Positions 9,014 through 27,800 of a stretch of 64,000 nucleotides of DNA are shown one piece after another (position 1 is the first letter of the stretch; each line of letters starts with the position of its first letter). The DNA is from Ministeria vibrans ATCC 50519 (taxonomy: Eukaryota; Protista; Filasterea), in NCBI GenBank assembly GCA_943704425.1, contig CALSCP010001993.1, positions 1-64,000 of the forward strand, in the 5' to 3' direction. Made by a program: the position numbers and the translations under genes. The notes under the pieces are model-generated. The model saw only the letters and a list, made by a program, of their open reading frames with translations, made no database searches and had not been told where the DNA came from.

Positions 9014-9111
9014 TTAGCGCGCCTCGACTTCCGAAATGGTTTTCTCGAGCTGATTGCGCACAAGACACTCGACAAGAACAGTCGCAAGAGAGGGCAGTCG
9101 CACCTGCACAA

Positions 9112-9147
<36 letters not shown>

Positions 9148-9338
9148 ATTTGTGTGTGTGAGTAAACAGACTCATGTAATCATCACTGCTGTGCTTACCG
9201 GCTTCGACACAAACGCATCCATTCCTGCGTCAGAACACGCCTTCCTCATGTCATCAAACGCATCTCCAGTCAACGCCACAATCGTCACTCTGCACATGCG
9301 AAAATAATTAATACCCAATAAAAACTAAGAAGCTCTGC

Positions 9339-9370
<32 letters not shown>

Positions 9371-12300
9371 GTCCCTTTCTTTTTTCGTGTTCGTACCTGG
9401 ACATACTCGAATTGGCACCCTCAATATCGCGGATCTGGCGAGAGACATCCGTTCCAGAGATGCCGGGCATCTGCTGGTCCATGAATATGATGTGAAAGGG
9501 CGTGGCAGCGTGCATGGCGAGCGCCTCGGTGCCTGACGAGGCAGTGGTGACGTTACTGGCGCCCAAACGCGTAAGCATCTTGGCCACAATCACTTGATTG
9601 ACGGTGACGTCATCCACGACAAGCACGCGCGACGTCTTCCACAGCTCACAGTGTCGCAGCCAGTCCTCGTGTGCCGTGTTCTCATGTGACTTCTTGCAAC
9701 GTGTCGTCGTCGTGCTACGACTGAAACTATCGCCGCGCACAAGCACCGGCACGTCGAGTCCTGCCATTGACGAAACCGATGAATGCGACGACGAGTGACT
9801 CACACTCTGGTTGCTGCTGTGGCTCGTCAACGGTGCTCTGCCCTCAGTGGCCAACATTGACGCAGACGTCGACAGCGCAGGGTGCTCAAACACGCCCAGA
9901 TCGGCACTGTTAATGGCGTCCATGCATGTCGCTGACCAGCTTTTCTTGCGCGCCGCCGCTGTCACGTTCTTGTAAAAGAGGCGACGTCGTTCGCCTGGCG
10001 ATGCTCGCGTTGGCACTGACTCCACGCTGCTCCGTGTACTACGCAGCATCTGGAGCGGCTTCAGATCAAAGCTCTGCACAATGGTGCGCTGTAGAAAGCG
10101 AAAGACTGCGTGCGAGTTCATGCGACGCCCGTCAAGCACCTCGTGGATACCCGAGGCACGCAACGACGGCAACAACGTCTCACTCGGCATCTCCTCTCCA
10201 TCGTGCACATACACGCACACTTGAACAGCGCCGTTGCGACACAACTGCCCCACCGACTCGACTTGGCTCTTCTCACCAAAGACCAGACATAAATGGAAAG
10301 GCATGCGATTGTTAGCGGCCAGTCGGGTCACGTCCTCGGCAAACTCGGGAGCACACGCAACGGGCGGACAGCGCAGACGCAAAAGAATCTTCATGAATCG
10401 CGCCGCAAGGCATGTGGAGCCATCAACGATCCCATGCTCGTTGCCATCGTCGGCCATTTCTAGTGCAGTGTCCACGTCGTCGCTCACGATGACAATGCGA
10501 GCCTCAGTTAGCTGTCGCACATCCAGTCCATCGCCACCAGTAGGAGCACCGTCAGACGCAGCACTGTCAGTCACAGCGCCGGCATCACCACTGAAAGTTG
10601 AGGCAGCATTCGACTCGCCACGACTTGCGATCGACGACGCGCTGCTTGCCGCAAATCTCTCAAAGAACACCAGGGACGGGGAGACACCATACTCTCTTGT
10701 AGCGCGCGGTGACGTTGGCGCTAGCATCGTCGGCATGCTTTGGCCACGGCTGAATGGTGGTGCCAGCTGGGGATCGGCCGTCGTTGTTGGTGCGGTATCT
10801 TTTTGCGATGAGAGGCGTACCGACAGTAATCCTGAGTCGGCACGCCGGAAGGGGCCCGGAGAGACGGGTGGCTGCGACACTGACGAAGAAGAGACGGAAG
10901 GCGATGAGGAAATTCGGCCACGACTCAGGTCAAAGTCATCCTGGCTCGCCGAAAAGTCTGACATGCTCAGCATCACTGAAGCGGCCGACAAGGCAGTGGT
11001 TCTCGCGCTGTCGGTTGATGCTGCTGCACCAAGCGATGACGATGAATCCGAGTCGTGCAAAGGTTCATTCAAAAACGGGCTGTTCGCCCAGCGGGCGAGC
11101 AGGGATGGGTCGCTGGCCGCAGCCTGCGCCATCTCCGCAATGTTGTCACTCGTGCTCTTGCTGAGCACCTCCGCAGTGTGCACAGGTGCAAAGAGAGTGC
11201 AGTAAAAAGTGGAGCCCTGGCCGGGTGTGCTCTCGCACCAAATGTTGCCACCATGGAGAACCACAAGCTCCTTGCAAATGGCCAATCCAAGACCTGTACC
11301 CTTCTCGGCGTGATGCAGCGGGTCAGCACTGACATGGGGCGGGGCTGTCGATGCATCAGAGGTGTCCGAGCCGCGCGAGATCTGCGAGAACGGCAGAAAG
11401 AGGTCCTTGACACGATCGGCGGGGATGCCCATGCCCGAGTCGCTCACGCTCAGGAGTACCACGACACCACGGCCTGAAGGAATGCTCGGTAGCGACACGG
11501 TGCTGTGCAGCTCGCACTCAATCTTGATGGCGCCCTTTGTCGTAAATTTGAGCGCATTGGAGATGAGGTTGGTGAGAACTTGGCGGATGCGCAGAGCGTC
11601 GCAATAGAGATGTCGTGGCACCGCAGGCGACACAAGAACACTCAGCGAAACGTCGGGCGATGAAAGAGCGCTGAGTCGATGCAGCTGAAAAATCTGCTCA
11701 ATGAGTGCGGGGAAGTCACACGGCGAGAACTCCAGGCGAAACTTGCCCGCCTCAATCTTGCTGAAGTCGAGGATGTCGTTGAGAATGGCTAGCATGTGGT
11801 CGCCGCTGCTATGCACAATCTTGGCGTACATAAGCTGCTCGTCGGTGAGCGTGTCGTCGGCTGAAAGGAGCGATGCACATCCAATGATGCCATTCATGGG
11901 GGCACGCAGTTCGTGCGAGACGTTTGCCAGAAAACGACGTTGTACGTCACGCACGCGAATGGCCTCGTCACGTGTCTCGGTCACAGTCTCTTCCTGCTCC
12001 ATCAGCGACGTGCGCAACTCTGCATTTTCACGTCGGAGAAGTTCAACTTCGAGACGCAGTCGTTCTCGTTCGCTCGAGCCACCGTCGCCCTGCAAAGCGC
12101 TGGCCGATTCGGTCACCGACAGAAACGACGACGACGCACTGAGTGGAGTGGTTGCTGGAGGAAAAAGTGACGAGGAAGATGCAGAGGCCGCCTTAGTCAT
12201 TGTCGTTTCCACCGCCAGGGAGGAAGAAGAAGAGGACAGCGACGCCGCCACCGGCACCGCCGCCGCAGGGATGTGCGAAAGCGATACACGAGAAGACAAC

Positions 12301-13581
12301 GTAGATGAGTGACCACGCGACGACATGACAGGGTTGGGACTAAGTTCATGTTCGGCGATGCCTCGCGCCACCATTTCTTGGTGGGACGTGACAAAAGGAC
12401 GCACAAGAAGATAGACAAAGTCGTTGTAGCGAACGGCATGACCCACAAGGACAAGGTCTTCGACGTGGCACCGCAATCGAGTCCATGGCGAGCTGTCAGC
12501 GACACTAATGAGCTGTTGGAGGGACGCTGCCATGGCCGGTTCCTCGACAGCAACGCGACCGGAGATGACCTTGCCAATGGCCAGCGATGGAATGATTTCA
12601 CGGCAACGAGTGCCAGCGGACAGCAGCACAGCATTGGTGTCGAGGGTTAGGTGAAAGGGAAAGGCTTTGGACACAAAGTCGGCGGCGGAATCAAGAAGTG
12701 CCCGACGAATGGAGTCGACAACAAGCGGCGACGGCGAAGAATTGGGGACATTCGACAGGCTTATGCGACTCTTGTGAAAGATATTGCCGTCATCGTCGAG
12801 CTCCGTCATGGACATGGCTGTCTTGCTGTCGCTACTGACGCTTTGATGAGCGCTACCGATTCTGACACCCGACGCACTCATCAGTTTGCGTCGCTTCAGC
12901 GAGAGACGGTGACGGTTGTGAAATTCAGTCTGTTGATTCTGGTGACGGTTTGCCATGCTTGCCACGACGGCAGCAATCGTGTCCGACGTCGGCTGAACGT
13001 CGGTTGATTCAAGGGGCATGTGGTGTGGCAGCGACTCTTGCAATGGTTGTGCGAACGATTGTTGCTGGGGTTGCGGCGAGATGGGGGGAACGGCAGTGGG
13101 ATACTGAGGGTCGGACCAAGTGACACGAGTGCCGTGGTCGGTTGAGGTATTTCGGAGAGTGAGGACTATGTCGCTTGCACTGCGTTGAACATTGCCACTA
13201 CTGCGTCTCGTTTCTGCAATGGTTGTGGAGTAGGACGACGAAGATTCTGTCGAGAGTAGCACGTTGGTGGGTTCCTTGATCTGGGAAGGGAGAGGCGGCA
13301 CGTCCTCCAGGCCAGTAGGGGAGACTTCGGGGGTGGAGCCGTTGGCGAGAAGTGTGGAATTGGAATCGAAGTTGAAGTGAGACTCGTGAGAGCTTTTTAG
13401 ATCGCGCTCTAGGGTGGTGAGCGGTAGGGAACCTTCGGGATGGGCTGCATCGCCCTTGAGGGGCATCACGAGGGTGTTGCGTTTGTGAAACACATCCGTG
13501 TCCCCAATGGGCGACTCATCTTGCTTGAGCACCACCTCTGCCTGTTGTTGTTGTTGTTGTTGTTGTTGATGATGATGATGA

Positions 13582-13624
<43 letters not shown>

Positions 13625-15400
13625 GAGATTGGTCGCCGGAGAGGGTGAGTGACGAGAGACTCGCGGAGATTGGGCAAGAGGCAAAGGGCTTGGAGGCAGG
13701 TGCGCTGCTTGAGAGGTTGCTGGAGCTGAAACTGGTGCGTGGAGCGCCTGATCGGAGTATTTTACCGGCACTGAGGTACCGCTTAGCAAGCAGACTTTCG
13801 CGTCGGAGCGTGTCGAGAGGGGAGACGATGCGATCGACCGACGGGGCACGACGATGCATCGACGTGACTGGAGGCGTGGCAGCGTTGGTCATCTCGTCAA
13901 AGCAGAGTGTGATTACACTACTTGAGACGGACCGTGACAATGACTGTGTCGAGAGGGTGGAGTCCGAGTCGATCGATGAGCGAGGGACCACGTCGCGAGG
14001 ACCAAAATTGGAACGCATGTAGCGAATGGAACGAGTCTCGACAAGGGACTTGGGCGAGGGTGTGTCCAAGAGGACGGGCGTGTCTCGGTTGTCGTTGGCG
14101 TTGGGGTTGAGGTTGTTGTTGCCGCTGTTGTTGTTGCCGCTGTTGTTGGCGTGGCCGAGTGTGTCAGGACCAGCGGAAGAAGTCGACTCGGTGTCGCTGT
14201 TATTCTTGGCAGTGTCGAGACTGAGACTGTTGAGGCTGTCGTGAGGCGACGTGTCCGCACTCTTTTCAGCCTCAACGAAAATAGAGTAGGAGACGTCGGC
14301 GGATGTGAGAACGAGGTCGTCGGGGAGCGAAGATTCACAGTAGTGCACAAAGAAGACGTCATGACTGGCGCCGACCGCACGAGACTCGATAAGGGAGATG
14401 TCGACGTCGACGTTATAGAGCCAGCCGACGGCGCGCGTGAGGCCCATCACATAGCTGCTGAGGCCGAGCCTGGACGCGCGACCGGGGATGTAGTGCAGCT
14501 GGAAGCTCGCAGGGGTCTCGTCGCTCACCCAAAAGCACGGAGGAAAGCCACCACTGGAAGAGGGCATTTGGCCGGCGTGAAGTTTGTTGAGCGTCGCAAA
14601 GAACGACACAAAGTCGCTGTCGAAGAAGTGGCGGACCGATTCCCAGACGCGCAACCCACGCAGGTAGACAATGACATGCTCGCCGAGGCGATCGAGAAAC
14701 TGGTCGAGGTCGAGCTTGAGAATGCCACACACTCGCTCGATGAGGCTATACGTGTCCTCGTCGCTGTACACATCGTCGATTGTATCTGGGAAAAAAAGAG
14801 GACACGTCAGAGAAGGTTTACGTCGTGACCGATTGCACGACAAGAAAGGCACGACGCGACCCGGGCGCTCGACCAGCGCGTCTCGCTATTGCGCCTGGCG
14901 GTAGGCGCGAACATGCGCTGGCCCTGGAAGACGCAATCATCGCCGAAAACTGAAAATGCCGTCTCCTTTCTTTTTTTTTTTTTTTCTCGCTTCTTTTGCA
15001 GTTGAAGCGATTGCGTTGGCAGACCACGCAAGAAAGCGCACAATACAGAAAACAGCACATATACTCCGGTGCAGGTTGGCGTCGGCAGCGATCCGCAAGG
15101 GAGGCGTCCAGCGAGCGGCGCGGGCTTCATCGACACCACGCCGGGGTACTAAAACACCGAAGGTGCACTTTCAAAGGGCCACGGCAGCAACGCGTGCGCT
15201 CGAGGGCGACCAGGTACACGTATACCACACGACGGTGCGTCGCAGCGGATCGAGAGAAGCCGCATAGGGTGGCAGAAGGGCCGAAACGTCAAACGCGGAA
15301 GGGCGCTCTCCTTACCAGCAAAGCCCAGCTCGTTCCACAGGTCTTCTCCATGGTGGACCACCACATAGTCTCGTACAGAGCTATGGATGATGCCCAGCAT
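9014..15400 (-). CDS. Hybrid sensor histidine kinase: H-NOX(HNOB) - HNOBA/PAS - coiled coil - HisKA - HATPase - degenerate receiver - receiver (~1,884 aa; exons 15316-15400, 9397-14785, 9199-9289, 9014-9103)
   Basis: H-NOX-like start MLGIIHSSVRDYVVVHHGEDLWNEL...YSDEDTY...LNKLH...PPCF...LHY. HNOBA-like FVSKAFPFHLTLD. H-box FLANVSHELRAPMNGIIG, N-box RIRQVLTNLISNALKFT, G1 SDSGMGI, G2 GTGLGLAIC. Receiver VLVVDDVTVNQ...IIFMDQQMPGISG...ALTG...FVSKP. GT-AG splice phases keep the frame (5,655 nt in total). Confidence 0.88.
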
Positions 15401-15873
15401 TTGGCGAAGGCGGGGAATAATAGTAGTAGGACTGACAACTCACAACTGTGGTCAGTGTTGAGTTTCAGCTGCGGTTTGACATCAAAATAATTATAAATAA
15501 AGAATCGAGAGCTGTACTCAATGTCAAAACAAGACTATATACAAAACAAAGATCACTAGAGCAGCACAATGCTTCCGTTGTGATGTACGCTGCGGAAAAT
15601 AAAGATTATTATTATTATTGTCGGGGGGATATTGCAATAATTGCATAATAATAAGAATAACAATAATTATACTAATACTAATAATACGTCTTATTAAAAT
15701 AATAATAGTAATAATAATAATACTACTACTACTAATAATAATAATAATAATACTATTCTTTTAACGTATTGTCACCTTAAAGAATAAATCTTGTTGAGGA
15801 CGAAATAAAAAGTTCAAAAAAAAAGTTATTTTGTATTCTCTCTCGCTCTCTTCGTTGGTCGTTTAGTGGTATC

Positions 15874-18800
15874 TCACTCCTTTTTCAACGCCGACACAAT
15901 TTTCTTTGCCAGGTTGTACAAGAAGGCGGCCACCTTCTTGATTCCCTCGAGAATCTGCTCACCCATTTGTTTGAGCGCTCGCGTGACTAGGCTCAGCACG
16001 TCGTACAAATTGATCTCGATGTTGAATCCAAAGCGAGCAAACACGGTCATGTCCAGTGCCGCCTTGACCCACATCGCGCCTGCCGCCGGATTAAAGTCCA
16101 ACTCAAACTTAAGCAGGTGCAGCTCAAAGTTGTTCTTCACAAACGTGACAAACTCCTCAATGACATTCAGGCCAAGATTGCCCACCGCCTGCGCCGCACC
16201 AACCACACCGTTGCAAAAGGCACTCGCGACGTCTCGCACGCCTCGATGCAGGAATGGCTCGACCAACTCGCTGTTAATGACCGCCGCTGCCGTCGAGTAC
16301 ACTGCTGCCCTGGTGCGTCCCTGCCCCCCGCTGGGACCGCACCACACGTGTCGCTGTTCGTGTCCACACAGCGCATGTGAAATACTAACGACAGTCGCAT
16401 CGCGTCGGCGATTCGTCGTCACACCGACCACGCTGCGCAAACACCGGTGATTGACGCATTCTAGTCCACTTGCACAGTTAACAGTCTTCAGACACGCTGC
16501 AGTCTCTCCGACTGTCCAACACACGCCGTTCACGCAGTGGTCCGATAGGCACTCTGCGTCGTGTTCACACACTGCGCCCACTGCCAGTGCCGACGCTGGG
16601 CACTCCGCGACACAGGCTGTGTTCTGACACTTGTGCGAGCACCGCGATGCATCGGACCAAAGCGCACATTGAGAGTCGTAGTGACAAGTCTCAATCTCAA
16701 ACGGAAGAATTGCCTCACAGCTACCCTTCCCATAGTTTCCAGCCACGCATTGATCCGACGTGCAGGAAGACGCGCGTAAACCATCGCAGGGCGCACCCCG
16801 TGGCAGACGACAGTACGAAGAGATGCACTCGAGGCCGCCACAGTCAGCCGACGACGCACACCACTCTCCAACGCGCGCGCTCATACTGCTACACTCCGCT
16901 CTGACAGGATCGCACGAGTGAGTAAGACACATCCACCGCGAGCACACACCCATGGGCGCCAACACTTGCCGCAATCGCGCCTGTGACGCAATGGGCGCGT
17001 ACACTGGGTTGTTCCATTCGCAGACGCCGCTCGCTCGATGGCAATGGTAGTATACCTCTTCGATTTTGCACTGTCTCGAGGTTTCGCAAGGCGACTCGCC
17101 GAGCAAATTCACCCGCAATGTGCCTCCCGACTTCACACATCGCGTACTCCTTGCGGATTCCTGCAAGAAGTACACACTCGCGCACTGATATCCTTTTGGA
17201 CATTCTGCTTTGAGCACACATGGCTGACCAGGACCCGTCCTGCATTCGCGCGCGTCCACATCACAATGTCCCGACACGCAATCCGCTCCGTCGGCACATA
17301 CACCATGCACTGGTGCGCCCACACACATCCCGCCTTTGCACACGCCCGACCGACACCCGACAGCACGACGACATGACTCGCCAACGTGAGCGCGCTGGGG
17401 TACACACATGCGATGGCGGCAATACCCCGAGCCACAGTCCTTATCCTCCGCACACACATCTCCATCCATGCGCATTTCGCACTTGCCGTCGCGACACCGC
17501 AATGACGCACATTGTGCATCAATTTGGCACGCTTCCGTAGCACCTCGAGGGGACCCATTGTAAGAAATGATCTTCCGACATGTACCGTAATAGCAGTCAG
17601 CCTCATAGCCGTCGGCGACACAGTCTGACCTGGTGCTACAGGTCGTTTGGCAGACTTGGCTGTTACATTTTCCGGAAGCACAGTCGTACCCGAGGTCACA
17701 TCGTTGTCCTCCCGCACGCAGACATTTCCCCGCAGTGCAAGACATATACTTGCCACACTCAGCATCACTTGTACACGACGATCGCAGTTTGTTCACGGCA
17801 CTGCACCGGCCAGTCTCCCGATCACAGGTGGAGCTGGCGCACTGTAGTGGCAAGCATAGCCCCACACTCTCCATGTACTTACGAAGCGCCACCTGGGCTT
17901 GATTGCCACTGAGCAGTGACACTGGCTCACGCCATCGACAGTACCCATCGTCGTTGCCACATCGAAAGTTGCCAATCCCCGGCAGGGAACAGGAACTCGA
18001 CGACGAACACGTGGTGGGAAAAGGTCCGACGACTGTGCCACCTGCGCCGCACTTTCCTCCATAACAGTGATCGTTCCAACACTCACCATCATCGGTACAC
18101 GGTGCACCAGTGAGCTGTCGACACGTAGTGCCACCTTTGCAGAGAGGCGCGTCCCACGAACACTCGGTGTTGTCGGCACATTGCTCACCCACATTGGCGT
18201 AGTCACACGCACCGGCACGACAGCGCCCCGAAGCACACTCGGCATTGCGGGCGCACACCTGCAACGGCTTCAGCCGCACCGGACCACATCGATAGTCAGT
18301 GCAAACGGCAGTAGCGCAGTTTGGTGCCATGGTACAGAAGCCACCCACGTCGCGCACTTGGCACACGCCTCGAGCACAAATGCCGCTTGTGCACTGTTCA
18401 TCAATCTCGCACGACTCGCCACGCTGCTTCTTCGCCGTACACGTGTAGCCCGAACAGCCCGGGGTGTTGTACGCGCATACACCGCCAGTGCAGCCGGACA
18501 CCGTGGGACAGCTATCTCCACCTGTACAGCTCCGTGCCCCCTTTGGCATAGTGCCACAGCAACTATGAGACGAAGAGCCAATGTAACAATTGTTGCCGTA
18601 GCACGACCGACCACCGCTACACTGCGACGACGAGCTGCAAGGACGCCCAGACTGCAACAAACATTTGCCACTGCTGCATTCAAGGTCACTGTGAAGCCCG
18701 CAGTCGGCATTGCTCGCACACGTCGCGCCCAATTTACTACTCTTGGCACATTGCGTCCCGTCGCACGCGTGCGTTGCACACATCCAGGGTGAACATACCC

Positions 18801-21800
18801 CCAGCTCGCTCAGGTGCTTCGACAGTGGGCTCTGCGATTCTCTTGCCGCAAACACCGGTTCGTCCCATCGGCAAAAGCGGTACACAGGGTCACACTTGAA
18901 CATTACGTTGAGCACGGTTGACTTCTGACAGTCGAATGCTGAATCACACCGGCATGAGCCCATCACATTGAAATGGTTGCATTCTTTCTTGGCGCATATC
19001 TTGAGCGAAATTGACATGCCTGGGAATGATGATGAGGCACACTCGCGCGTGGAACCCCACGACAACAAATCACACTCCTTGGAGCTTGAACACTGTTCGC
19101 CCAAAGCCTTCTTGCAGGTCCCGCCAGCGCAAAAGTTCGACACGCAGTCGCCATGTGCTGAGCAGCGAGCATTGTACTCTCTTCCTGCGCACCTTTCGTC
19201 CGTGCACATACCCGACGAACACTGGGCGTTGTACTGGCAGCGTGAGCCTCGGGGCTGCTTGGCACTACAAGAGGAGGCATGGCAATTGCCATTAATGCAG
19301 ACAAAGTTGCAGCCAAGAGAACCCGATGGAGAGCACTGATCGCTAGAGGTACACGGTGCGCCTACCACGTCGCACTGTTGTACCGAGTGGAAAGTTGTCG
19401 AGTGTGGCAATTGAAACAAGGCGCCGTACTTAACCTTGAATTCGTACTTTGAGCGCGTCACGCAGTAGCCGCCGCCGGGACACTGATCGTCGTTGCGACA
19501 GGAATTTCCACCAGAATACACACAAAGACCATCGACGGAGCAGGACCAGCCAGTGCCACAGGACCGGTCTGTGCTGCACACCGAGTCAGCTTGTCCGTTC
19601 GTCGGTCCGCATCGTTTTGACACCAAACACTTTCCCGACTCACACTGGGCATCGAATGCGCATGCGTGACCCGCCAACTTCAGCAGCGAGCTCGGACAAT
19701 AGGCAGCGCGATCCTTGTAGCAGAATAGGTGTGTCGCGTCACACTCCATTGCACATCCTTCTACCAGTGGACAGTCAGCGCTCGAGCGACATTCACATTC
19801 ACCACGAATGTTCACTCGGGAGTTTGGGCACGACAGGGACTTCAGCGAGCATCGTTTGTCTGGCGAACCGTCGGGTAGCTTTGCGTTCACCTGGCGACAG
19901 GAATATTTACTGCCACAATCACCGTCCGTCTGGCACCACGACCCGGCACCACCAACGCAAACAAATTCAATCGGACTGCACGCTTTGCTAGCGCAGTTGG
20001 CATCCCACGCGCACCGCAATCCCTTAGCCAGGGACACACAGACAGAGTTCACGCACAGGTCCGACTGACAGTGGCTGTTGGTGCGACACTTACTCCCGTC
20101 AGCCAGCAGCGCCAGCTGGATACTACATGGTCCGGTCGTCTCATGTCGATGACAAATGCCCGACGCTGTGTCACACGTACGCGCACAGGCCGTATCGAAG
20201 CCAGCGGTGCACGAAGGGGAGTAAATGCTACAGGCAGGTCGTCCGTAAACATTGAAGACTCCACGCGCCTCTTTCAGCGCACACACTCGTGGGCGCGTAC
20301 CATGGAAACCCGCTCGACCAGCCGACGCCTGTGCACACTCGGCCGTGCTACTGCACTCCATGCTATCACCACACTGCTCTCCCAATGCTCGCTTGCACGT
20401 CATGCTGTGCAAATCACACTGGTCGCTGTAGCAGTTTTGATGCGCCACACACTTGGAGCCAAATACACGCGCGACGCACAGGCCGCCCTCGCACAAACGT
20501 GATTCGCATTGGAGGTCCACACTGCATGCGTCACCAAGTGTGCCGACCGTTTCACAGGCAGTCACCTCGCACACTCCACTTGCATAGCGGCAACGGCGAG
20601 TGCAACCATCAACAAGTGACAGAGCGTGACAGATGGCATCACTACACACCGGTGTCCAGCTCACAGGTGAATACACGGCCCACTGGGTAGCGCACACCTG
20701 TACAGACACGGATTCATAGCCATAGTCGGCATAGCGAAGCAGTGCGCTTGAGCAACTGGCACCCGGCACTTGATACACGCAATCTCCGTCGTTGCGACAC
20801 ACATTGCCTTGACCCGGCTGGCACACTCCGTTGCTGGCACACACACTGCCTCTTCCACAGTCCTCTTGCGACGTGCACGCCCGATCCCGTGCAAAGCCCG
20901 GCACCGCGCATTGACCCGAATGACAGAAACCAGACCAGCACTGTGCGTGCGCTCGACACAACGCGCCCGTGTCACGCATCGCCGACGGCTCACAATGGTT
21001 GATTGCACCGCACGTGCCAAAGACGCTATCACAGCGCGTGTCGCAACCTTCAAGCTTTGGACAATCTTTGTCCGTCCCACAGGCACACGTGCCCTTGTAG
21101 GTGTGCTTGTTGACACAGTCGTTTGCAGCGCACATGGTTGGCAGCTGGTTTTGTTGAGACAGGTCGAAGCCCATGACTGCCAAAAAAGAGCACTTTGCTG
21201 TGCTCTTGGAGCAGTCGGCATCACTGGAACACGCCGATCCAAGCGACAAAACACACTTGCGAGTGGCAGAGTTGCACTCGCCGGAGGTACACTGATTGTC
21301 GGCCGTGCAATGATGTCCGTCGGGTACGTTGCCGGCCAAGTGAAGGCAGTAGCCAAATCGGTCACGAGTGTCGTCGTTGGAGAAGCATAATTGCGCACAA
21401 CGCTGATTCAGACAGGTCGCCTCACGTTCACACAGAGTCCATTTGCCGTCGCATGACTGGCCAATGTTGCGCAAGCGTGTAGGACGCGTGGTTGTCATCA
21501 GTGTGTCGACATGCTGCGTGAGCAAGGGCCATGTAAACACGGTCATGTGGACGCTGCGGCCATTCCCATTCGCCACCAGCTTGGGCAGGACAATGACGGT
21601 TGTCTGCCAGCCAATAGTCGCTTCGCCAGAAGCAACGCCGTCAAAGAAAAAGCTCACCTCACCAAGGTTGTAGTCCACAGAGATCGCCAAGTGCAAAATG
21701 GTGGTGTCGCTCGACGTGCCACCGTTGTTGAAGGGTGACGCACTCGAATCTGACATAACCAGCGCATGCTCAGTCGCCACGCCCGCTCGCACACGGCCCA

Positions 21801-24800
21801 ATTGCGCATATACTCGTCCGTCACAGTCGTAGTACACGGAGACAGTCTCGCGCTCACTTCCTGTCGTTTCCACGTAAAACACGTGTTGCAATTCGGGAGT
21901 TTGACAGTCGCGCATCTCCACCCATGCGGCGATAGAGAGATCCGCCGGAGAGTCCACCACTGTTGCGAGCGAAACCGATGCCGGTTGCGTTCGAGCATTC
22001 TTGAACACTGGCAGCGGCTTGGCCCGCGGCATGAACACTGCTGGTCCCCATTGAGCACCAGACGGCTCTCCCACATTCTCAACGATCGTGTGCCATTCAC
22101 ACGTGCCCTCGTATTGTACCTCAATCTTGTACGATGCTGTCCAGTCGACGGCACTTGACGTGCCTGGCGCTACACGACGCGTCCGGGCACCAAGTCCGGG
22201 CATATCAACATGCCACGGCAGCACCAACGACACGTCGCGATCAGCCGACTCCTCCTCGGGCACATCAACGTTTGGCACTCGATGCTCTGCACGTTTTCCT
22301 CGGTTCCCCCCGACATCGTAGGCGTTGAACAACTGACTTGGTTCTGCCTCATCGCAGACATTAAATATAAACATCCACCTAGCGCTATATACCACTGAGA
22401 GACACAATTGACTCTCGCGGTTCCGCAACATGAAAGGTCGACCCACGACGTAAGGCGACTTGACTGGCAGCACGTCAAAATGCTGCCGAGGGTTCGTCGT
22501 GGACGGAATTAAGGCGTACAATCTGGCGCCCGGCCGAGCGGGCTCGACATACTTCAGTGCCATATCCAACACTCCTGGCGCCACCGAAAGTGCAAAACCA
22601 GCCGATGCGCGCAACAGTCCTCCTTCCACGTGGGAGAAGGATGTCCGTTGCGATCGATGGTACAAGGTGAACGGATAGTGGAAGCTAATATGTTCGTCAT
22701 CCAGGCCCGAACATGCATCCACACCCACAGCATTGCCCATGACCTTGAGGCATTGGTGAGTTGCCGAGTTGCGCAACACGCCGCCGTATCCGCCCGGACG
22801 CGACGAAATGAGCTCCCAATGCGAGTTTGCGACAGTGGTCACGCGTGATAGACCCAGTGTGTATGTTGTGCCCGACTTGACAACATGCACAACTCGACCG
22901 TCAAACAGCGTCAGCTGTGCATTGGAAGTACTCTTGAATACTTTACAGGCCCCAACGCCCATTTCGAGAACGGCCGAGCCCGTGCCGGTACGCATGCACT
23001 TGTTGCCACGCACAAGATGATAATACGTTGCATAGCGCAATTCGAATTCAAGGGGGAGTACAGGTGGGTCCTGTTGCACTGCGGCGTCCACCAGCCGCCA
23101 GTCGGAGCCGTCGTCGTTACACGTGGGCAAAGTTGCCAGTTGATCGCCGCTGCCACTTAGGCATCGCAGGGTGCCGGCCACGGTCGTCTGCAAGGCGATG
23201 GTTCCGGGTCCACTTTGGGCCTTTCGGTCCAACACCGTCCAGGGTGTCGGGCAGACAGTCGCTTGCCACGACGCAGTCGTTTTTCTCGCACACAAGTACT
23301 GGCTCGTCGCGAGCGACTGAATTTGCCCACCGACAATATGTACGTGCTGTGCATTTCCTTGAAGTGGCCCCGCACACGCGTGCAACGTCCCGTCACTCGC
23401 CAGACATCGCGTCGCAAGAACATTTCGCATTGTCATGGCTGTCGGGGCGCTAGACAATGCAAATGAGGGAAACTGCGATGCGGCGCAATTGCTTCGCTGC
23501 ATCGTGCCTGTCGGATGCAGCGACAGGCATGTGTCGCCATGCTTCACGATCACCTGTTCGCTGCCGACACCCTCGGAACTGAGCGATGCCAGCGCCAGCA
23601 TGGGTCCCACAATCATTTTGTCATTGGTTGTCCGTGTAGTGCACTCCGCGACGTGGCCCGCACACGAGACACCATGCAACACTTGGATGGCCGAGGAGAG
23701 TGCAAAGTCGCTCACGTCTCCCTCGGCCCACGATGTCCGCAACTGAACGGACACACGGTAGTCGTGACCAGGGAACAGAACAGAATGCGACGACACGGCA
23801 CCAAAGCGAACACGGGTTATCTTGTGTAACTCCGCCAAGCTTGAAACAGACGCATGTGTTAACTGATGAGTGCCATGATGCAGACGCACAGTCACCGAAC
23901 CGCTCATTGAGTCCAAATCAAACACGCCTAGAGCTGTGAGTCGCATGACACGTCGTACACGAAACACAAAACCCACGGTTCGACTGGCACTGTTGCTGAC
24001 AACAAGTGACGAGGCAGGAGCCGCCAACAGCGCCGGTGAGCCGTGTCGGTGAGGCGAAGCAGCCAGTTTCCATCGCGTTGGGTTTGAGCCGCACGTTGAC
24101 AAACCAACGCTGGCGGTGCCTATCGCGTGCACACACTGGCCCGTGGCCACTTGAGCCAAGGCACCATTGCGCGTCAGTCGGAAGGTGCGCTCGGCAACCG
24201 GCAAGCACTGGCAAGCGCCAACACACTGAGCTTCGGTCGGGCCCGCACAAGGCTGAGCTGGTGGCGCAACCGTTGTGCGTGCGGGCACCTGTGCCAGGGC
24301 AAATGTGTCCTCGGTGTCCTCCATGGACCAGGCAGCAATTGAGCTCTGACACGACACAAACCCAAGGGAGAAGTGACCCAGAGCTGAGCCTGACACAACC
24401 GCGAGGCAGGAGCGCGCCCGGCTGTTGTGCAGTACAAAGTCATTGACGGAGCTGGGCGTACTCATGCTTCTGCGGAATTGCCATGACTGCTCTTGCGCCA
24501 GGGAATCTGAGCATGCAACCGCTCGCACAGCGCTGCTGGCGGCCACAAGGCACGACGCACCAACCACAAGTTGTTGCACGTCGCCTGAAACTAGCACATG
24601 TGCGTGCTGGGTACCCGCCCATCTCATACACGACTGGACTGTGAGAATGTGATTTATCACATCCAAACACAGTCCAAATTCATCGTGCTGCAGCGAGAAT
24701 ACCCGTCCGACCAATTGAGCACCCAACTGAAGCTGGGCCAGCTGTGGCCGACTGGGCAGCGTCATGATCAGTTGTGAAAAGTAACAGGGTCCGCTGAGAA

Positions 24801-27800
24801 CACTGCCGTCAATCAAGGCTCGAGCACACGCCGCCAATCCCCGTGCCCCGTTGACAACACGCACAAGGTTGGGAATGGGCTGCAGTGGAAGCAGCTGGGT
24901 GCTCTTGCCAAAGTGACCGGTGTACATGCGCAGTTCGGTCAGCCATCCAGGCAGTTGTTTCTTCGACGCGTTCGTCACGCGAATCCGCCGCACACGTAGA
25001 TTGGTCTCTTTGCGCGGATAATTGAAGGGACGCAAAGCGAATCCATTGTGCATCGCCGGCTTGACAGCGTGCCACGACGTCTCCGTCCACAAGGTATGCC
25101 ACGCATCGCCATCGGTCGCACATTCTGTGTGCAGCTGACCTTCGATCCGCTGGATGCATTGGAACGCATCTGTGGTAAACTGCTGCATGTGCATCGCAGA
25201 GGGACACTTGAGCAACACCTCCGAGACGCCCTTGGCCACAGTCACACCGCTCTGCGAATTTAGGAAATCCAGCGAGACGCCATTAGACAGGGTGCAGTCG
25301 GAAGGGAGAGCAAGAGGGGCCGGACTCTGTTTTCGGAAAAGCATAAGCCACTTGGGGCGACACGAAAAGCCTGACGCTTGAAACACGATGCGCAGGGCGC
25401 GCAAAGCAAACTCCGTCTGACACTCTGCATCCGCAAGCGGCTCACCCGTCTCGTCGACCGTGTCCGTGGCACACCACTCGTAGGAGCGACCCAGCGTGGT
25501 GCAGCCGGAAAATCTCTGGTTTCCCACCCGGAAGGGCACGCAGGGCGAGCTGGACACGCTCATGCGCTCACTCAGGTGCTCTCGTTGTCGGCTGTCCGCG
25601 TACAACAGAACATCCTGACGCTCACTGTGTGACAAATGTTCCTCCAAGGTCACACTCTCACGCAGATCACCGATAAGTCGCGAGAGGCGACTGTGCGGCG
25701 CGACGCCACTGTACAGTTGAATATTGTTAAGCTGATCGCGTAGTTCGGCCATACGTTGGATGTACACCTCGGCGGCGCCAAGGGCACACGACTTGACCTG
25801 CTGAACTTGGCGGCGCAAGCACAGCGCACGAGCACGTTCAATTTCTTCGGTGCGACCCTTGCACACTGCGCCGTGCAATCCCTTGATCATGTTGTCGATA
25901 AACCGGCTATAGCGCTCCACGGGCACATCACGACGTGCCACCGCCATCAGTACGGCTCCGTGCGTGCGGTAACGACGCACCAGGTCACCGGCGTCCGTGT
26001 CACCCCGCATCTCAAGGAGGGCACGCGTACGTCTAGCATCGTGCACGCGCAAGACGACCATCTGGGTGCTACGCCGCTTCAAGTGGTTGTAATAGGGCGA
26101 AAATTTCTTTTCGATGGCCGCGGCGACGTCAATAAGCAGCTCACTTCGCGCCGACATGTCGTTTGCCTCGGCGCGAAGATTGCCAATGTCCGAATAGAAA
26201 CGCATCCCTACAGCATGTGCTTCGCTCAACATGTCGGCCACACGCTGCAGGTGCGCCATCTTGGTGTTGTACGAGCCGGTGACCGGAAACTTTTCTAGCT
26301 CGGCTGCGGCTGCGTCGACCTTGGCAGCGTATTCTGCCTCGGCTGTGCCCAGGCTCGCCTGTGCCTTGGCCGTGATTGACTCGATGAGTGCGTCCGTCTC
26401 CTCGACCGCCTTGTTGACCTTGTCTACACAGTCAATTTCGTCGCAGGTGATCTCGTCGTCGCCACAGAGCACATCGACAGCAAAGTCTCCCACAGCTTCC
26501 GTGACGTCAACCACAAAGGAACCCACGGCGTCAGCAATTGCCTTGAAATCACCATCGCGCAATGCCTTTACTAGCTTCTGCGACACTTCTTGAGCGGCCC
26601 TCTTGAGCTTATCACCCAGCTGCTTGCCTGCCGTCGCAATGGACTGTGTCACTTGCTTGACGGCTGTCGCGACCTCGCGAATGGCTGTCTGCACTTCCTG
26701 CACCGTCATCTTTACACCTTGCTGTACGGCCTGACCAACGTCACGCAGGAAGCCAGCACAGTCGTCCTTGGCGCCTTCCATTTTCAGATTGAACGAAATG
26801 CTCGCCTTGCGCAAGTGATCCAGAATTTGTGTGGTCACCTTGCCAAAGTTGGTGTTGGCCTGTACAAGCGCGTGCAGTCGTGGGGACGAAATGGACTGCA
26901 GATCGAGATCCACTGCAACCTTGACCGACAGGATTGACCAGATGGTCAATTCGAAGCGGAAGCTCGTTGGCGAGAACTTAATGTAAATCGAGTTCCAAAG
27001 ACCGAGGAACTACAACAAACAGATGATTATTTAAAATTATTAATAATTATTATTATGAATAATATTATAGCCATTCATAATTCTTACGTCCTCACCTCTC
27101 TCTCTCTCAAACACTATGCTCTCTCTCTCAAACACTATGCTTGCTCTCTCACAGACTTCTCTCAAACACCATGCTTACCCTCTCACTCTATGCTTTCTTT
27201 ACGTTACTCTCTTCCCTCCCCTCTCTCCACTTTGCACTCTCAATCTCCCTCTCATTCTCACCTGAATGGCACCGGCAACCTCAAGTTCAAGCTTCTTTGG
27301 CAGGTCCATATCGAGGTAGAACGAAGGACCCCTGTCTTGCTCAGTGATGGTGCGCACGACGTTGATAACACCGAGCTTGATGGGACACAGCTTGACATCT
27401 ATCAGGACGCGCTTGGGAGGGATGCTGATAATGACGTGAGCATCAATCTCACAGCCGAACAGATTAAGCAGCCCCTTGAGGGAGAAGCCGGCGGGAATAT
27501 GGACGTTGCCCAGCACAGATGTACGATCGGCAAAGGCAAATGAGACTTGCAGGCCCTTGGGGAAGCCCGTGTCGCGGATTGGCTTGGGTAATTTGTCGAC
27601 ACTGAACGACGGCACCATCACGTCGAAGACCTTGGCCACCGTGATGGTGCTCAGCGCAAAGTAAAAGTAGTTGTTCTTGTAGTTGCCCACGTCAACACCC
27701 AGTGCCAATTGCATGCTGATTGTCTTGTCGCTGTCGACAAAGCCTGTAGGCGCTGACACATCGTAGGTGCAGGCGTTGTTGAGACCAAAGCACATACTTG

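What the first reader, a model, noticed from the sequence alone, without database searches (positions are those of the whole stretch)
9014..15400. sGC-type gas-sensing module (H-NOX + HNOBA + coiled coil) wired to a hybrid histidine kinase in an intron-containing eukaryotic gene
Seen: splicing a short first exon (15316-15400) onto the 1855-aa ORF restores a complete H-NOX domain, which the ORF track alone hides. The proximal His (LNKLH, ~14577) and following Pro are kept. Downstream lie an HNOBA/PAS segment (FVSKAFPFHLTLD...LVRPFVTSHQEMVARGI, ~12340-12680), a coiled coil, intact HisKA/HATPase boxes and a receiver. Established: H-NOX-PAS-coil is the regulatory half of animal soluble guanylyl cyclases. 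Bacterial H-NOXs usually regulate histidine kinases as separate proteins, and animals lack two-component systems. Inference: this is a single-chain, soluble NO/O2-responsive phosphorelay sensor that bridges bacterial H-NOX/HK systems and animal sGC. It is the best candidate for a novel system in this window, though similar architectures may already appear in eukaryotic HK surveys.
Basis: partly seen in the sequence, partly recalled or inferred. Interest (0 to 1): 0.85.

Follow-up and report, generated by a model that had tools for sequence, protein, structure and literature searches.

The report
Single-chain H-NOX gas-sensor histidine kinase
A spliced, expressed gene of a marine eukaryote joins a heme gas-sensor domain (H-NOX), its partner PAS domain and a complete hybrid histidine kinase in one protein, whereas bacteria encode these parts as two proteins and animals wire the same sensor to a cyclase.

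Summary
A four-exon gene on the minus strand (15400..9014, 1,884 codons) encodes these parts in order:
- an H-NOX domain
- about 540 low-complexity residues
- an HNOBA-type PAS domain
- about 75 low-complexity residues
- a coiled coil, HisKA and HATPase_c
- about 500 further residues
- a receiver domain

Transcript contigs from two studies show the exon1-exon2 splice. A DNA run does not. Exon 1 supplies the missing N-terminal helix of the H-NOX domain.

The proximal His, the Pro, and the Tyr and Arg of the YxSxR motif are kept. The motif carries a 3-residue insertion (YIPGRASR) that about nine relatives share. The distal-pocket position (sGC beta1 I145) is a Tyr, which is rare: 4 of 135 relatives.

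Both sensor domains resemble the cyanobacterial two-gene pair (H-NOX plus HNOBA-kinase) more than animal sGC. Trees do not resolve the origin.

The genome has one H-NOX, one HPt and at least 10 kinase loci. No NOS or H-NOX cyclase was detected.

All 37 H-NOX matches found in 401 sampled cyanobacterial genomes lie in short open frames rather than kinase fusions (one is below the Pfam cut-off). Two reviews of eukaryotic histidine kinases mention no H-NOX kinase.

This is a new variant of a known kind. Heme binding and gas control remain untested.

The parts
15316..15400 (-). Exon 1: start codon plus 28 codons, forming the N-terminal helix of the H-NOX domain (M-x-G ... G ... W pattern).
   Evidence: Translation. 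It scores 18.8 bits on positions 1-24 of my own H-NOX HMM. Transcript contigs end at 15402 and 15411.
14786..15315 (-). Intron 1 (530 nt, GT..AG).
   Evidence: The joint 14785|15316 appears in transcript contigs of X1 and X4 and not in DNA run X12. A low-depth contig that retains the intron is also present.
9397..14785 (-). Exon 2 (5,389 nt): the rest of H-NOX, the linkers, HNOBA, the coil, the kinase core and the first two thirds of the receiver.
   Evidence: Open frame. Transcript contigs are continuous over 9500-13531 and 13635-14785 with no other joint.
14328..14785 (-). H-NOX domain, the part carried by exon 2.
   Evidence: Pfam HNOB 2.8e-15 and 62.2 bits in the genome scan. Best solved structure is Nostoc Alr2278 H-NOX at 7e-13; sGC beta1 scores 4e-7.
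14577..14579 (-). Proximal heme-ligand His, equivalent to sGC beta1 H105.
   Evidence: It is invariant in alignments A1 and A2 and is His in 128 of 135 relatives. The beta1 numbering is read.
14469..14492 (-). Remodelled heme-propionate motif YIPGRASR (canonical YxSxR). Tyr and Arg are kept, there is a 3-residue insertion, and the canonical Ser position is Ala.
   Evidence: About nine relatives share the same Y-x-P-G-x-x-x-R form, among them P0001, P0034, P0062 and P0127.
14451..14453 (-). Distal-pocket Tyr at the position of sGC beta1 I145 (the Arg of the motif plus 6).
   Evidence: It is aligned. Only 4 of 135 relatives have Tyr there; the rest have F, M, L, I, V or W.
12711..14297 (-). Linker 1: about 530 low-complexity residues rich in S, T, N and Q. 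It includes the polyQ tract encoded by the CAG repeat at 13532-13634.
   Evidence: No Pfam match. Composition profile. All contigs, DNA and RNA alike, break at the repeat.
12303..12710 (-). HNOBA-type PAS domain, containing the FPFH motif at 12651-12662.
   Evidence: - Pfam HNOBA scores 22.1 bits, below the cut-off.
- The only PDB sequence hits are 2P04 and 2P08, the Nostoc punctiforme kinase PAS domain, at E 0.0045.
- BLASTP is collinear with the HNOBA domain of cyanobacterial kinase P0198 at E 1e-4.
- The AF2 model has pLDDT 86.4.
- The top Foldseek hits are 2P08 and 2P04, followed by sGC PAS domains.
12081..12302 (-). Linker 2: about 75 residues rich in Ser and Ala, between the PAS domain and the coil.
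   Evidence: Translation and composition profile.
11928..12080 (-). Coiled coil (signaling helix) that runs into the DHp helix.
   Evidence: A hydrophobic repeat in two heptad registers. It aligns with the helix before the H-box of P0198.
11745..11942 (-). HisKA (DHp) domain. The H-box is SHELRAP and its phospho-accepting His is at 11913-11915.
   Evidence: Pfam 7e-19 and 74.8 bits in the genome scan.
11193..11600 (-). HATPase_c catalytic domain with the N, G1 (DSGMGI), F and G2 (GTGLGL) boxes.
   Evidence: Pfam 6e-23. It is 38-43% identical to bacterial hybrid kinases.
10056..10526 (-). Folded alpha/beta segment between the kinase and the receiver. It may be a degenerate receiver-like domain.
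   Evidence: No Pfam hit. The single-sequence AF2 model has pLDDT 64 and a (beta-alpha)5 pattern. Foldseek gives only weak matches (E 3e-3 to 2e-2), several of them receiver domains. The result is inconclusive.
9397..9626 (-). Receiver domain, first part. It has the DD pair, and the phospho-accepting Asp in FMDQQMP at 9477-9479.
   Evidence: Pfam Response_reg 4e-12, profile positions 1-67.
9199..9289 (-). Exon 3: middle of the receiver, including the conserved Thr (ALTG) and Lys (SKP).
   Evidence: Translation. It matches Response_reg profile positions 71-100. The flanking GT..AG sites are read.
9014..9103 (-). Exon 4: last helix of the receiver and the stop codon.
   Evidence: Translation and splice sites. 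Introns 2 and 3 are inferred from frame and consensus and were not covered by the laid reads.

Best explanation
The gene encodes a soluble, cytosolic, heme-based gas sensor built as a hybrid histidine kinase.

Shown: one spliced mRNA carries an H-NOX domain, an HNOBA-type PAS domain, a coiled coil, a catalytically intact DHp/CA kinase core and a complete receiver.

Inferred mechanism:
1. The H-NOX domain binds heme through the conserved His.
2. Binding of a diatomic gas changes its conformation. The distal Tyr and the lack of a detectable NOS make O2 at least as likely as NO.
3. H-NOX hangs on a long flexible tether and docks on the PAS/coil/DHp dimer, as separate bacterial H-NOX proteins dock on their kinases and as sGC H-NOX docks on its PAS and coil.
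4. Docking switches autophosphorylation. In the bacterial pairs the liganded H-NOX inhibits the kinase.
5. The phosphoryl group passes from the His to the receiver Asp, then to the genome's single HPt protein, then to response regulators.

Functionally this is the bacterial two-protein H-NOX/HNOBA-kinase system on one chain.
For: - Architecture: with exon pieces.
- Splice and expression: two transcript data sets plus a poly(A) marine metatranscriptome.
- Heme-pocket residues: the His, Pro, Tyr and Arg are kept. They are present in 128, 132, 134 and 132 of 135 relatives respectively.
- PAS fold: the HNOBA-type fold is confirmed, and its nearest structures are the Nostoc kinase PAS domain and sGC PAS domains.
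- Kinase and receiver: the H, N, G1, F and G2 boxes and the receiver D, D, T and K residues are all present.
- Split precedent: in a cyanobacterium a 183-aa H-NOX gene lies directly upstream of an HNOBA-GAF-HisKA-HATPase-REC-HPt gene, in the same order as the domains here.
- Phosphorelay parts in the genome: one HPt with the AHTIKGS motif, at least 10 HisKA loci, and receiver loci on contigs with no HisKA match.
- Solubility: no membrane-like segment.
Against: - The canonical Ser of YxSxR is Ala and the motif has an insertion, so heme affinity may be changed.
- The long disordered linkers rule out the rigid H-NOX-PAS-coil coupling seen in sGC.
- A complex prediction for H-NOX with the PAS domain gave no verdict.
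- No contig spans the CAG repeat, and the 3' contigs are 1.7-2 times deeper than the 5' ones. A shorter isoform without H-NOX is therefore not excluded.
- No ortholog was found, so conservation of the architecture could not be checked.
- Nothing biochemical was tested.
Confidence: 0.62

Rival explanations
1. The H-NOX domain is a heme-free or weakly heme-binding pseudo-sensor, like the sGC alpha subunit. It would serve as a docking or regulatory module, and the kinase would be controlled by something else.
For: The canonical Ser is replaced and the propionate-binding motif carries an insertion. The domain sits on a very long branch and scores only 57 bits on Pfam HNOB, against 115-173 bits for most of the other multidomain proteins tested.
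Against: The proximal His, the Pro, and the Tyr and Arg are all kept. The same insertion variant recurs in about nine relatives that also keep those residues, so it looks like a functional subtype and not decay.
Confidence: 0.15
2. The heme domain reports redox state or oxidants (heme oxidation or thiol chemistry) and not binding of a diatomic gas.
For: A 2025 paper describes oxidative activation of a bacterial H-NOX; I saw only its title and abstract in the search list and did not read it (PMC12329717). No NOS was detected in this genome.
Against: The distal Tyr is the feature used to predict O2 binding in H-NOX and sGC families (10.1101/2022.02.14.480389). Nothing here points specifically to redox sensing.
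Confidence: 0.12
3. The fusion is only apparent at the protein level. An internal start, or cleavage in the disordered linker, yields a free H-NOX and a separate HNOBA-kinase, which would recreate the bacterial two-protein arrangement.
For: The linker is 540 residues of low complexity. Contigs break at the CAG repeat, and depth is higher over the 3' part.
Against: The frame stays open for 1,855 codons through the linker. The contig break also occurs in DNA runs, so it is technical. A 3' depth bias is usual in poly(A) libraries.
Confidence: 0.08

Closest known systems
Cyanobacterial H-NOX / HNOBA-histidine-kinase gene pairs (Nostoc Alr2278-type H-NOX; Nostoc punctiforme signal-transduction kinase, PDB 2P04/2P08; pair in L011 with P0198)
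   Same: The same domains occur in the same order: H-NOX, then HNOBA-PAS, helix, HisKA, HATPase_c and receiver. These are the best solved-structure matches for both sensor domains. The kinase core is 38-43% identical.
   Different: In cyanobacteria they are two genes. All 37 H-NOX matches (36 of them above the Pfam cut-off) found in 33 of 401 sampled cyanobacterial genomes lie in short open frames rather than kinase-length fusions: the 36 above the cut-off are in frames of 53-273 aa. Here they form one chain with introns and long low-complexity linkers, with no GAF or C-terminal HPt domain. The kinase core does not group with the HNOBA kinases in a tree.
Animal, choanoflagellate and green-algal soluble guanylyl cyclase (H-NOX-HNOBA-coil-cyclase)
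   Same: H-NOX and an HNOBA-type PAS domain are on one eukaryotic chain ahead of a coiled coil. The sGC PAS domains rank just after the Nostoc structures in the fold search.
   Different: The output is a histidine kinase with a receiver and not a class III cyclase. The genome's cyclase loci carry no H-NOX. H-NOX similarity to beta1 is weaker than to Nostoc H-NOX. The domains are separated by long disordered linkers.
Bacterial H-NOX-regulated kinases without HNOBA (the Shewanella and Vibrio type H-NOX/kinase operons reviewed in PMC8738867 and PMC6769237)
   Same: The logic is the same: a heme-NO/O2 sensor controls autophosphorylation of a kinase that feeds a phosphorelay.
   Different: In those systems the proteins are separate, there is no PAS partner domain, and the context is bacterial. 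That liganded H-NOX inhibits the kinase comes from my own knowledge and was not tested here.
Other eukaryote-type H-NOX-HNOBA fusions found among the hits (RasGAP: P0034, P0131; protein kinase: P0047)
   Same: They show that the H-NOX-HNOBA module is joined to outputs other than a cyclase. P0034 and P0131 share the Y-x-P-G insertion variant.
   Different: Their outputs differ. None of the ten longest hits scanned carries HisKA or HATPase_c.

Membership tests
H-NOX (Pfam HNOB, PF07700) | Profile match above the curated cut-off (25.5 bits). | tested here: met
   57.1 bits and 62.2 bits for the exon-2 part alone. Exon 1 matches the missing N-terminal positions.
H-NOX (Pfam HNOB, PF07700) | Proximal His heme ligand and the following conserved Pro (beta1 H105 and P118). 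| tested here: met
   Both are present. The beta1 numbering is read.
H-NOX (Pfam HNOB, PF07700) | YxSxR heme-propionate motif. | tested here: inconclusive
   Tyr and Arg are present, but the canonical Ser is Ala and there is a 3-residue insertion (YIPGRASR). About nine relatives share this variant.
H-NOX (Pfam HNOB, PF07700) | Binds heme b and a diatomic gas. | not testable with these tools
   This needs expression and spectroscopy.
HNOBA (PF07701) PAS domain | Profile match above the curated cut-off (23.4 bits). | tested here: not met
   22.1 and 21.1 bits, covering profile positions 6-67 only.
HNOBA (PF07701) PAS domain | The PAS fold of the sGC / Nostoc kinase type, placed between H-NOX and a signaling helix. 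| tested here: met
   The model has pLDDT 86.4. Foldseek ranks 2P08 and 2P04 first (rmsd 1.9-2.1 A), then sGC PAS domains, with generic PAS domains about 100 times weaker or more. The alignment with P0198 HNOBA is collinear. One caveat: the model's alignment was made of HNOBA proteins.
Hybrid histidine kinase | HisKA with the H-box His, HATPase_c with the N, G1, F and G2 boxes, and a receiver with the acidic pair, phospho-Asp, Thr and Lys. | tested here: met
   Pfam hits, motifs located, and receiver completed by exons 3 and 4.
Soluble guanylyl cyclase | C-terminal class III cyclase catalytic domain. | tested here: not met
   There is no Guanylate_cyc match in this gene. The cyclase loci lie on other contigs and carry no H-NOX.
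Bacterial H-NOX/kinase two-gene system | Sensor and kinase are separate polypeptides encoded by neighbouring genes. | tested here: not met
   Here there is one open frame and one spliced gene.

The most novel reading that the evidence does not exclude
This is the first natural single-chain H-NOX-to-histidine-kinase sensor. It would act as an O2 sensor (distal Tyr, no detectable NOS) in a unicellular marine eukaryote that other first-stage notes of this scan take for a relative of animals. It would have arisen when a bacterial H-NOX / HNOBA-kinase operon was acquired and its two genes fused. That would show that the H-NOX-PAS-coil sensor module was wired to a phosphorelay as an alternative to the cyclase output of sGC.
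Probability: 0.25. Interest if true: 0.75.

Novelty: new variant of a known kind. Interest (0 to 1): 0.6.

Why it matters
H-NOX signalling is known in two forms. In bacteria a free sensor regulates a separate kinase, cyclase or chemoreceptor. In animals, choanoflagellates and green algae the sensor is fused through PAS and coil to a guanylyl cyclase.

A natural one-chain H-NOX-PAS-coil-kinase would matter in four ways:
- It gives a defined 1:1 system for studying how H-NOX conformational change reaches a kinase.
- It shows that the sensor module was recombined with different outputs in eukaryotes.
- It would be the first heme-gas-sensing two-component kinase described in a eukaryote.
- Its unusual pocket (distal Tyr plus the YxPGxxSR motif) is a natural test of the rules used to predict NO versus O2 selectivity.

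Tried and rejected
- Word-indexed searches for long relatives with the H-NOX region of the ORF and with a long canonical H-NOX protein (P0112) found nothing useful; one search found only Chlamydomonas-type cyclases. Sensitivity is limited, so this does not show absence.
- A metagenome scan with the H-NOX piece found no relative.
- The first genome-contig scan with alignment A2 failed for lack of conserved stretches.
- The H-NOX tree (120 rows, 143 columns) and the kinase-core tree (121 rows) both put this protein on a long branch with no supported neighbour. I therefore claim no donor and no 'bridge' position.
- Complex prediction for H-NOX (exon-2 part) with the PAS domain gave no verdict (score 0.32, mark 0.34). 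It counts neither for nor against binding.
- The idea of a pseudo-receiver at 10056-10526 stays inconclusive.
- The ESM Atlas look-ups only confirmed the H-NOX and bacterial HNOBA-kinase families.
- Contamination by a bacterial gene is rejected because the gene has introns, spliced transcripts and eukaryote-type low-complexity linkers.
Every search used exon pieces by reference, so no search or fold of the complete 1,884-aa product was run.
Full report
**Anatomy.**
The minus strand between 15400 and 9014 carries a four-exon gene. Exon 1 (15400..15316) starts with ATG and gives 28 codons plus one base before a GT donor. Exon 2 (14785..9397) lies inside the 1,855-codon open frame listed and translated. 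Exons 3 (9289..9199) and 4 (9103..9014) continue the frame across two short GT..AG introns to a TAA. All searches used exon pieces by reference.

**Is the splice real?**
Contigs of four public runs were laid on 9500-15499.
- Two runs from different studies (X1, X4) are labelled as probable RNA. Each has a contig that joins 14785 to 15316, skipping 530 nt with GT..AG ends on the minus strand.
- The DNA run X12 reads straight through the intron.
- Weak contigs (depth about 3, against 111 and 18.5) retain the intron, as pre-mRNA would.
- The share of sampled words held by these runs (0.88-0.90) fits loss of the three introns (732 of 6,387 nt).
- No other joint was seen. Exon 2 is continuous over 9500-13531 and 13635-14785.
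- The gap is the CAG repeat, where DNA contigs break as well, so the break is technical.
- Transcript contigs stop 2-11 nt upstream of the ATG.
- A poly(A) marine metatranscriptome (X6) holds four near-identical pieces of the gene (one differing letter in all).

Introns 2 and 3 lie outside the 6,000 letters I could lay. They rest on frame, consensus splice sites and the receiver profile.

**Does exon 1 complete the H-NOX domain?**
Pfam HNOB matches the ORF only from profile position 36. I built an HMM from 91 full-length relatives. Exon 1 scores 18.8 bits on positions 1-24. Apart from the open frame that contains exon 1 itself (14.9 bits), the best score in the six frames of 14786-15900 is 0.5 bits.

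**The H-NOX domain.**
The exon-2 part scores 57-62 bits on Pfam HNOB. An exhaustive phmmer search of 1.84 billion representatives gave 135 hits. The best is only 31% identical (E 1.8e-12), and most are proteins of about 180 aa, the size of the separately encoded bacterial H-NOX proteins.

Among solved structures, Nostoc Alr2278 H-NOX scores best (7e-13). Human sGC beta1 reaches 4e-7 to 3e-6.

The table compares the pocket residues with the 135 relatives. The beta1 numbering is read directly.

| Position (sGC beta1) | This protein | Relatives with the conserved residue |
|---|---|---|
| Proximal His (H105) | His | 128 of 135 |
| Pro (P118) | Pro | 132 of 135 |
| Tyr of YxSxR (Y135) | Tyr | 134 of 135 |
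| Arg of YxSxR (R139) | Arg | 132 of 135 |
| Ser of YxSxR (S137) | Ala | Ser or Thr in 125 of 135 |
| Distal pocket (I145) | Tyr | Tyr in only 4 of 135 |

The motif reads YIPGRASR, with a 3-residue insertion. The same Y-x-P-G-x-x-x-R form occurs in about nine relatives, and several of them have Ser or Thr one place later, as here.

A distal Tyr is the feature used to predict O2-binding H-NOX and sGC proteins (10.1101/2022.02.14.480389). From my own knowledge, the Tyr alone does not guarantee O2 binding.

**The HNOBA domain.**
Sequence evidence is marginal but consistent:
- Pfam gives 22.1 bits against a cut-off of 23.4.
- The only PDB sequence hits are the Nostoc punctiforme kinase PAS domain, 2P04 and 2P08, at E 0.0045.
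- My own HMM gives 19.5 bits.
- BLASTP is collinear over about 107 residues with the HNOBA domain of cyanobacterial kinase P0198, at E 1e-4.

An AF2 model made with an alignment of HNOBA-containing proteins has pLDDT 86.4. Foldseek ranks 2P08 and 2P04 first (rmsd 1.9-2.1 A). Human and Manduca sGC PAS domains come next. Generic PAS domains are about 100 times weaker or more. I accept it as an HNOBA-type PAS domain that misses the Pfam threshold.

**Kinase and receiver.**
HisKA (7e-19) and HATPase_c (6e-23) carry the H-box SHELRAP and the N, G1, F and G2 boxes. The receiver has the DD pair, the Asp in FMDQQMP, and the Thr and Lys on exon 3. No segment is hydrophobic enough for a membrane helix.

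About 500 residues lie between the kinase and the receiver. They contain one folded alpha/beta segment that weakly resembles receiver domains, but the evidence is inconclusive.

**Linkers.**
About 540 low-complexity residues, including polyQ, separate H-NOX from the PAS domain. About 75 separate the PAS domain from the coil. This differs from sGC and argues for a tethered-docking mechanism instead of a rigid relay. A complex prediction for H-NOX with the PAS domain gave no verdict.

**Context in the genome.**
The genome is 29.7 Mb in 2,860 contigs.
- It has a single HNOB locus.
- No NO synthase was detected.
- Its cyclase loci carry no H-NOX.
- It has one HPt gene with the AHTIKGS motif.
- It has at least 10 HisKA loci, and receiver loci on contigs with no HisKA match.

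The parts for a phosphorelay are therefore present. Any NO would have to come from outside the cell or from another route.

**Relatives and origin.**
A cyanobacterial genome encodes a 183-aa H-NOX directly upstream of an HNOBA-GAF-HisKA-HATPase-REC-HPt kinase, in the same order as the domains here. In 401 sampled cyanobacterial genomes, 33 have H-NOX. All 37 matches lie in short open frames rather than kinase-length fusions. The 36 above the Pfam cut-off are in frames of 53-273 aa. The one sub-threshold match (19.6 bits) is in a 577-aa frame.

The closest H-NOX, P0001 from soil metagenomes, sits upstream of an HNOBA-cyclase gene. Bacterial HNOBA-kinase clusters are among the nearest neighbours of the PAS-kinase half in the ESM Atlas.

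The kinase core is 38-47% identical to bacterial hybrid kinases. It is only 34-35% identical to the best paralogs in its own genome. This pattern fits acquisition of a bacterial H-NOX/HNOBA-kinase pair followed by fusion. However, both trees leave the protein on a long, unplaced branch, and it does not join the HNOBA-kinase clade. The origin is therefore open.

Other eukaryote-type proteins among the hits join H-NOX-HNOBA to RasGAP or protein-kinase domains. Shuffling of this module is therefore not unique to this gene.

**Literature.**
A survey of histidine kinases in 67 eukaryotes (PMC6324907) and a review of what eukaryotic kinases sense (PMC6944256) contain no mention of H-NOX, nitric oxide or oxygen sensing. 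The Acanthamoeba genome paper reports H-NOX proteins not linked to cyclases and describes no kinase fusion (PMC4053784). I found no paper describing this architecture. The library is not complete.

**Organism.**
The tools hide the organism's name. The runs and the metatranscriptome point to a marine eukaryote. Other first-stage notes call it an animal relative, which I could not verify.

**Verdict.**
It needs correction on three points: the closest relatives are cyanobacterial and not sGC, the sensor module is not contiguous, and O2 is at least as likely a ligand as NO. I rate this a new variant of a known kind, of real interest to people who study H-NOX and two-component signalling. Heme binding and gas regulation remain to be shown.

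Noticed in passing
P0034, P0131, P0047, P0013 (hits): Proteins that join H-NOX and HNOBA to a RasGAP domain (P0034, P0131) or to a protein-kinase domain (P0047). P0047 and P0013 come from EukProt. These are sGC-type sensor modules with outputs other than a cyclase.
   Followed up: partly
contig of P0001, locus L009: A bacterial 'split sGC' in soil metagenomes: a 186-aa H-NOX gene followed 8 nt later by a 378-aa HNOBA-Guanylate_cyc gene. This H-NOX shares the Y-x-P-G insertion variant with the window's protein.
   Followed up: partly
window 10056-10526 (-): A folded (beta-alpha)5-like segment between the kinase and the receiver. It lacks an Asp at the usual acceptor position and may be a pseudo-receiver, as in some plant-type hybrid kinases. 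The model is low-confidence and the fold matches are weak.
   Followed up: partly
window 13532-13634: A CAG repeat encoding polyQ/polyH inside the linker. Every contig, DNA or RNA, breaks there. The 3' transcript contigs are 1.7-2 times deeper than the 5' ones.
   Followed up: no
window 9104-9198 and 9290-9396; 15600-15790: A (CA)n microsatellite fills most of intron 3 and a (GA)n-rich run lies in intron 2. Long ATT/AAT microsatellites fill the intergenic regions on both sides of the gene.
   Followed up: no
G000:C1606:43855-44707: A cyclase gene whose helix before the catalytic domain matches only the C-terminal coil part of the HNOBA profile (positions 175-216). It has no H-NOX and is probably a receptor-type cyclase.
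   Followed up: no
window 15874-26949 (-): A 3,691-codon open frame lies directly upstream on the same strand. Another first-stage note (s1-773325) reads it as part of a giant secreted mosaic protein. I did not examine it.
   Followed up: no
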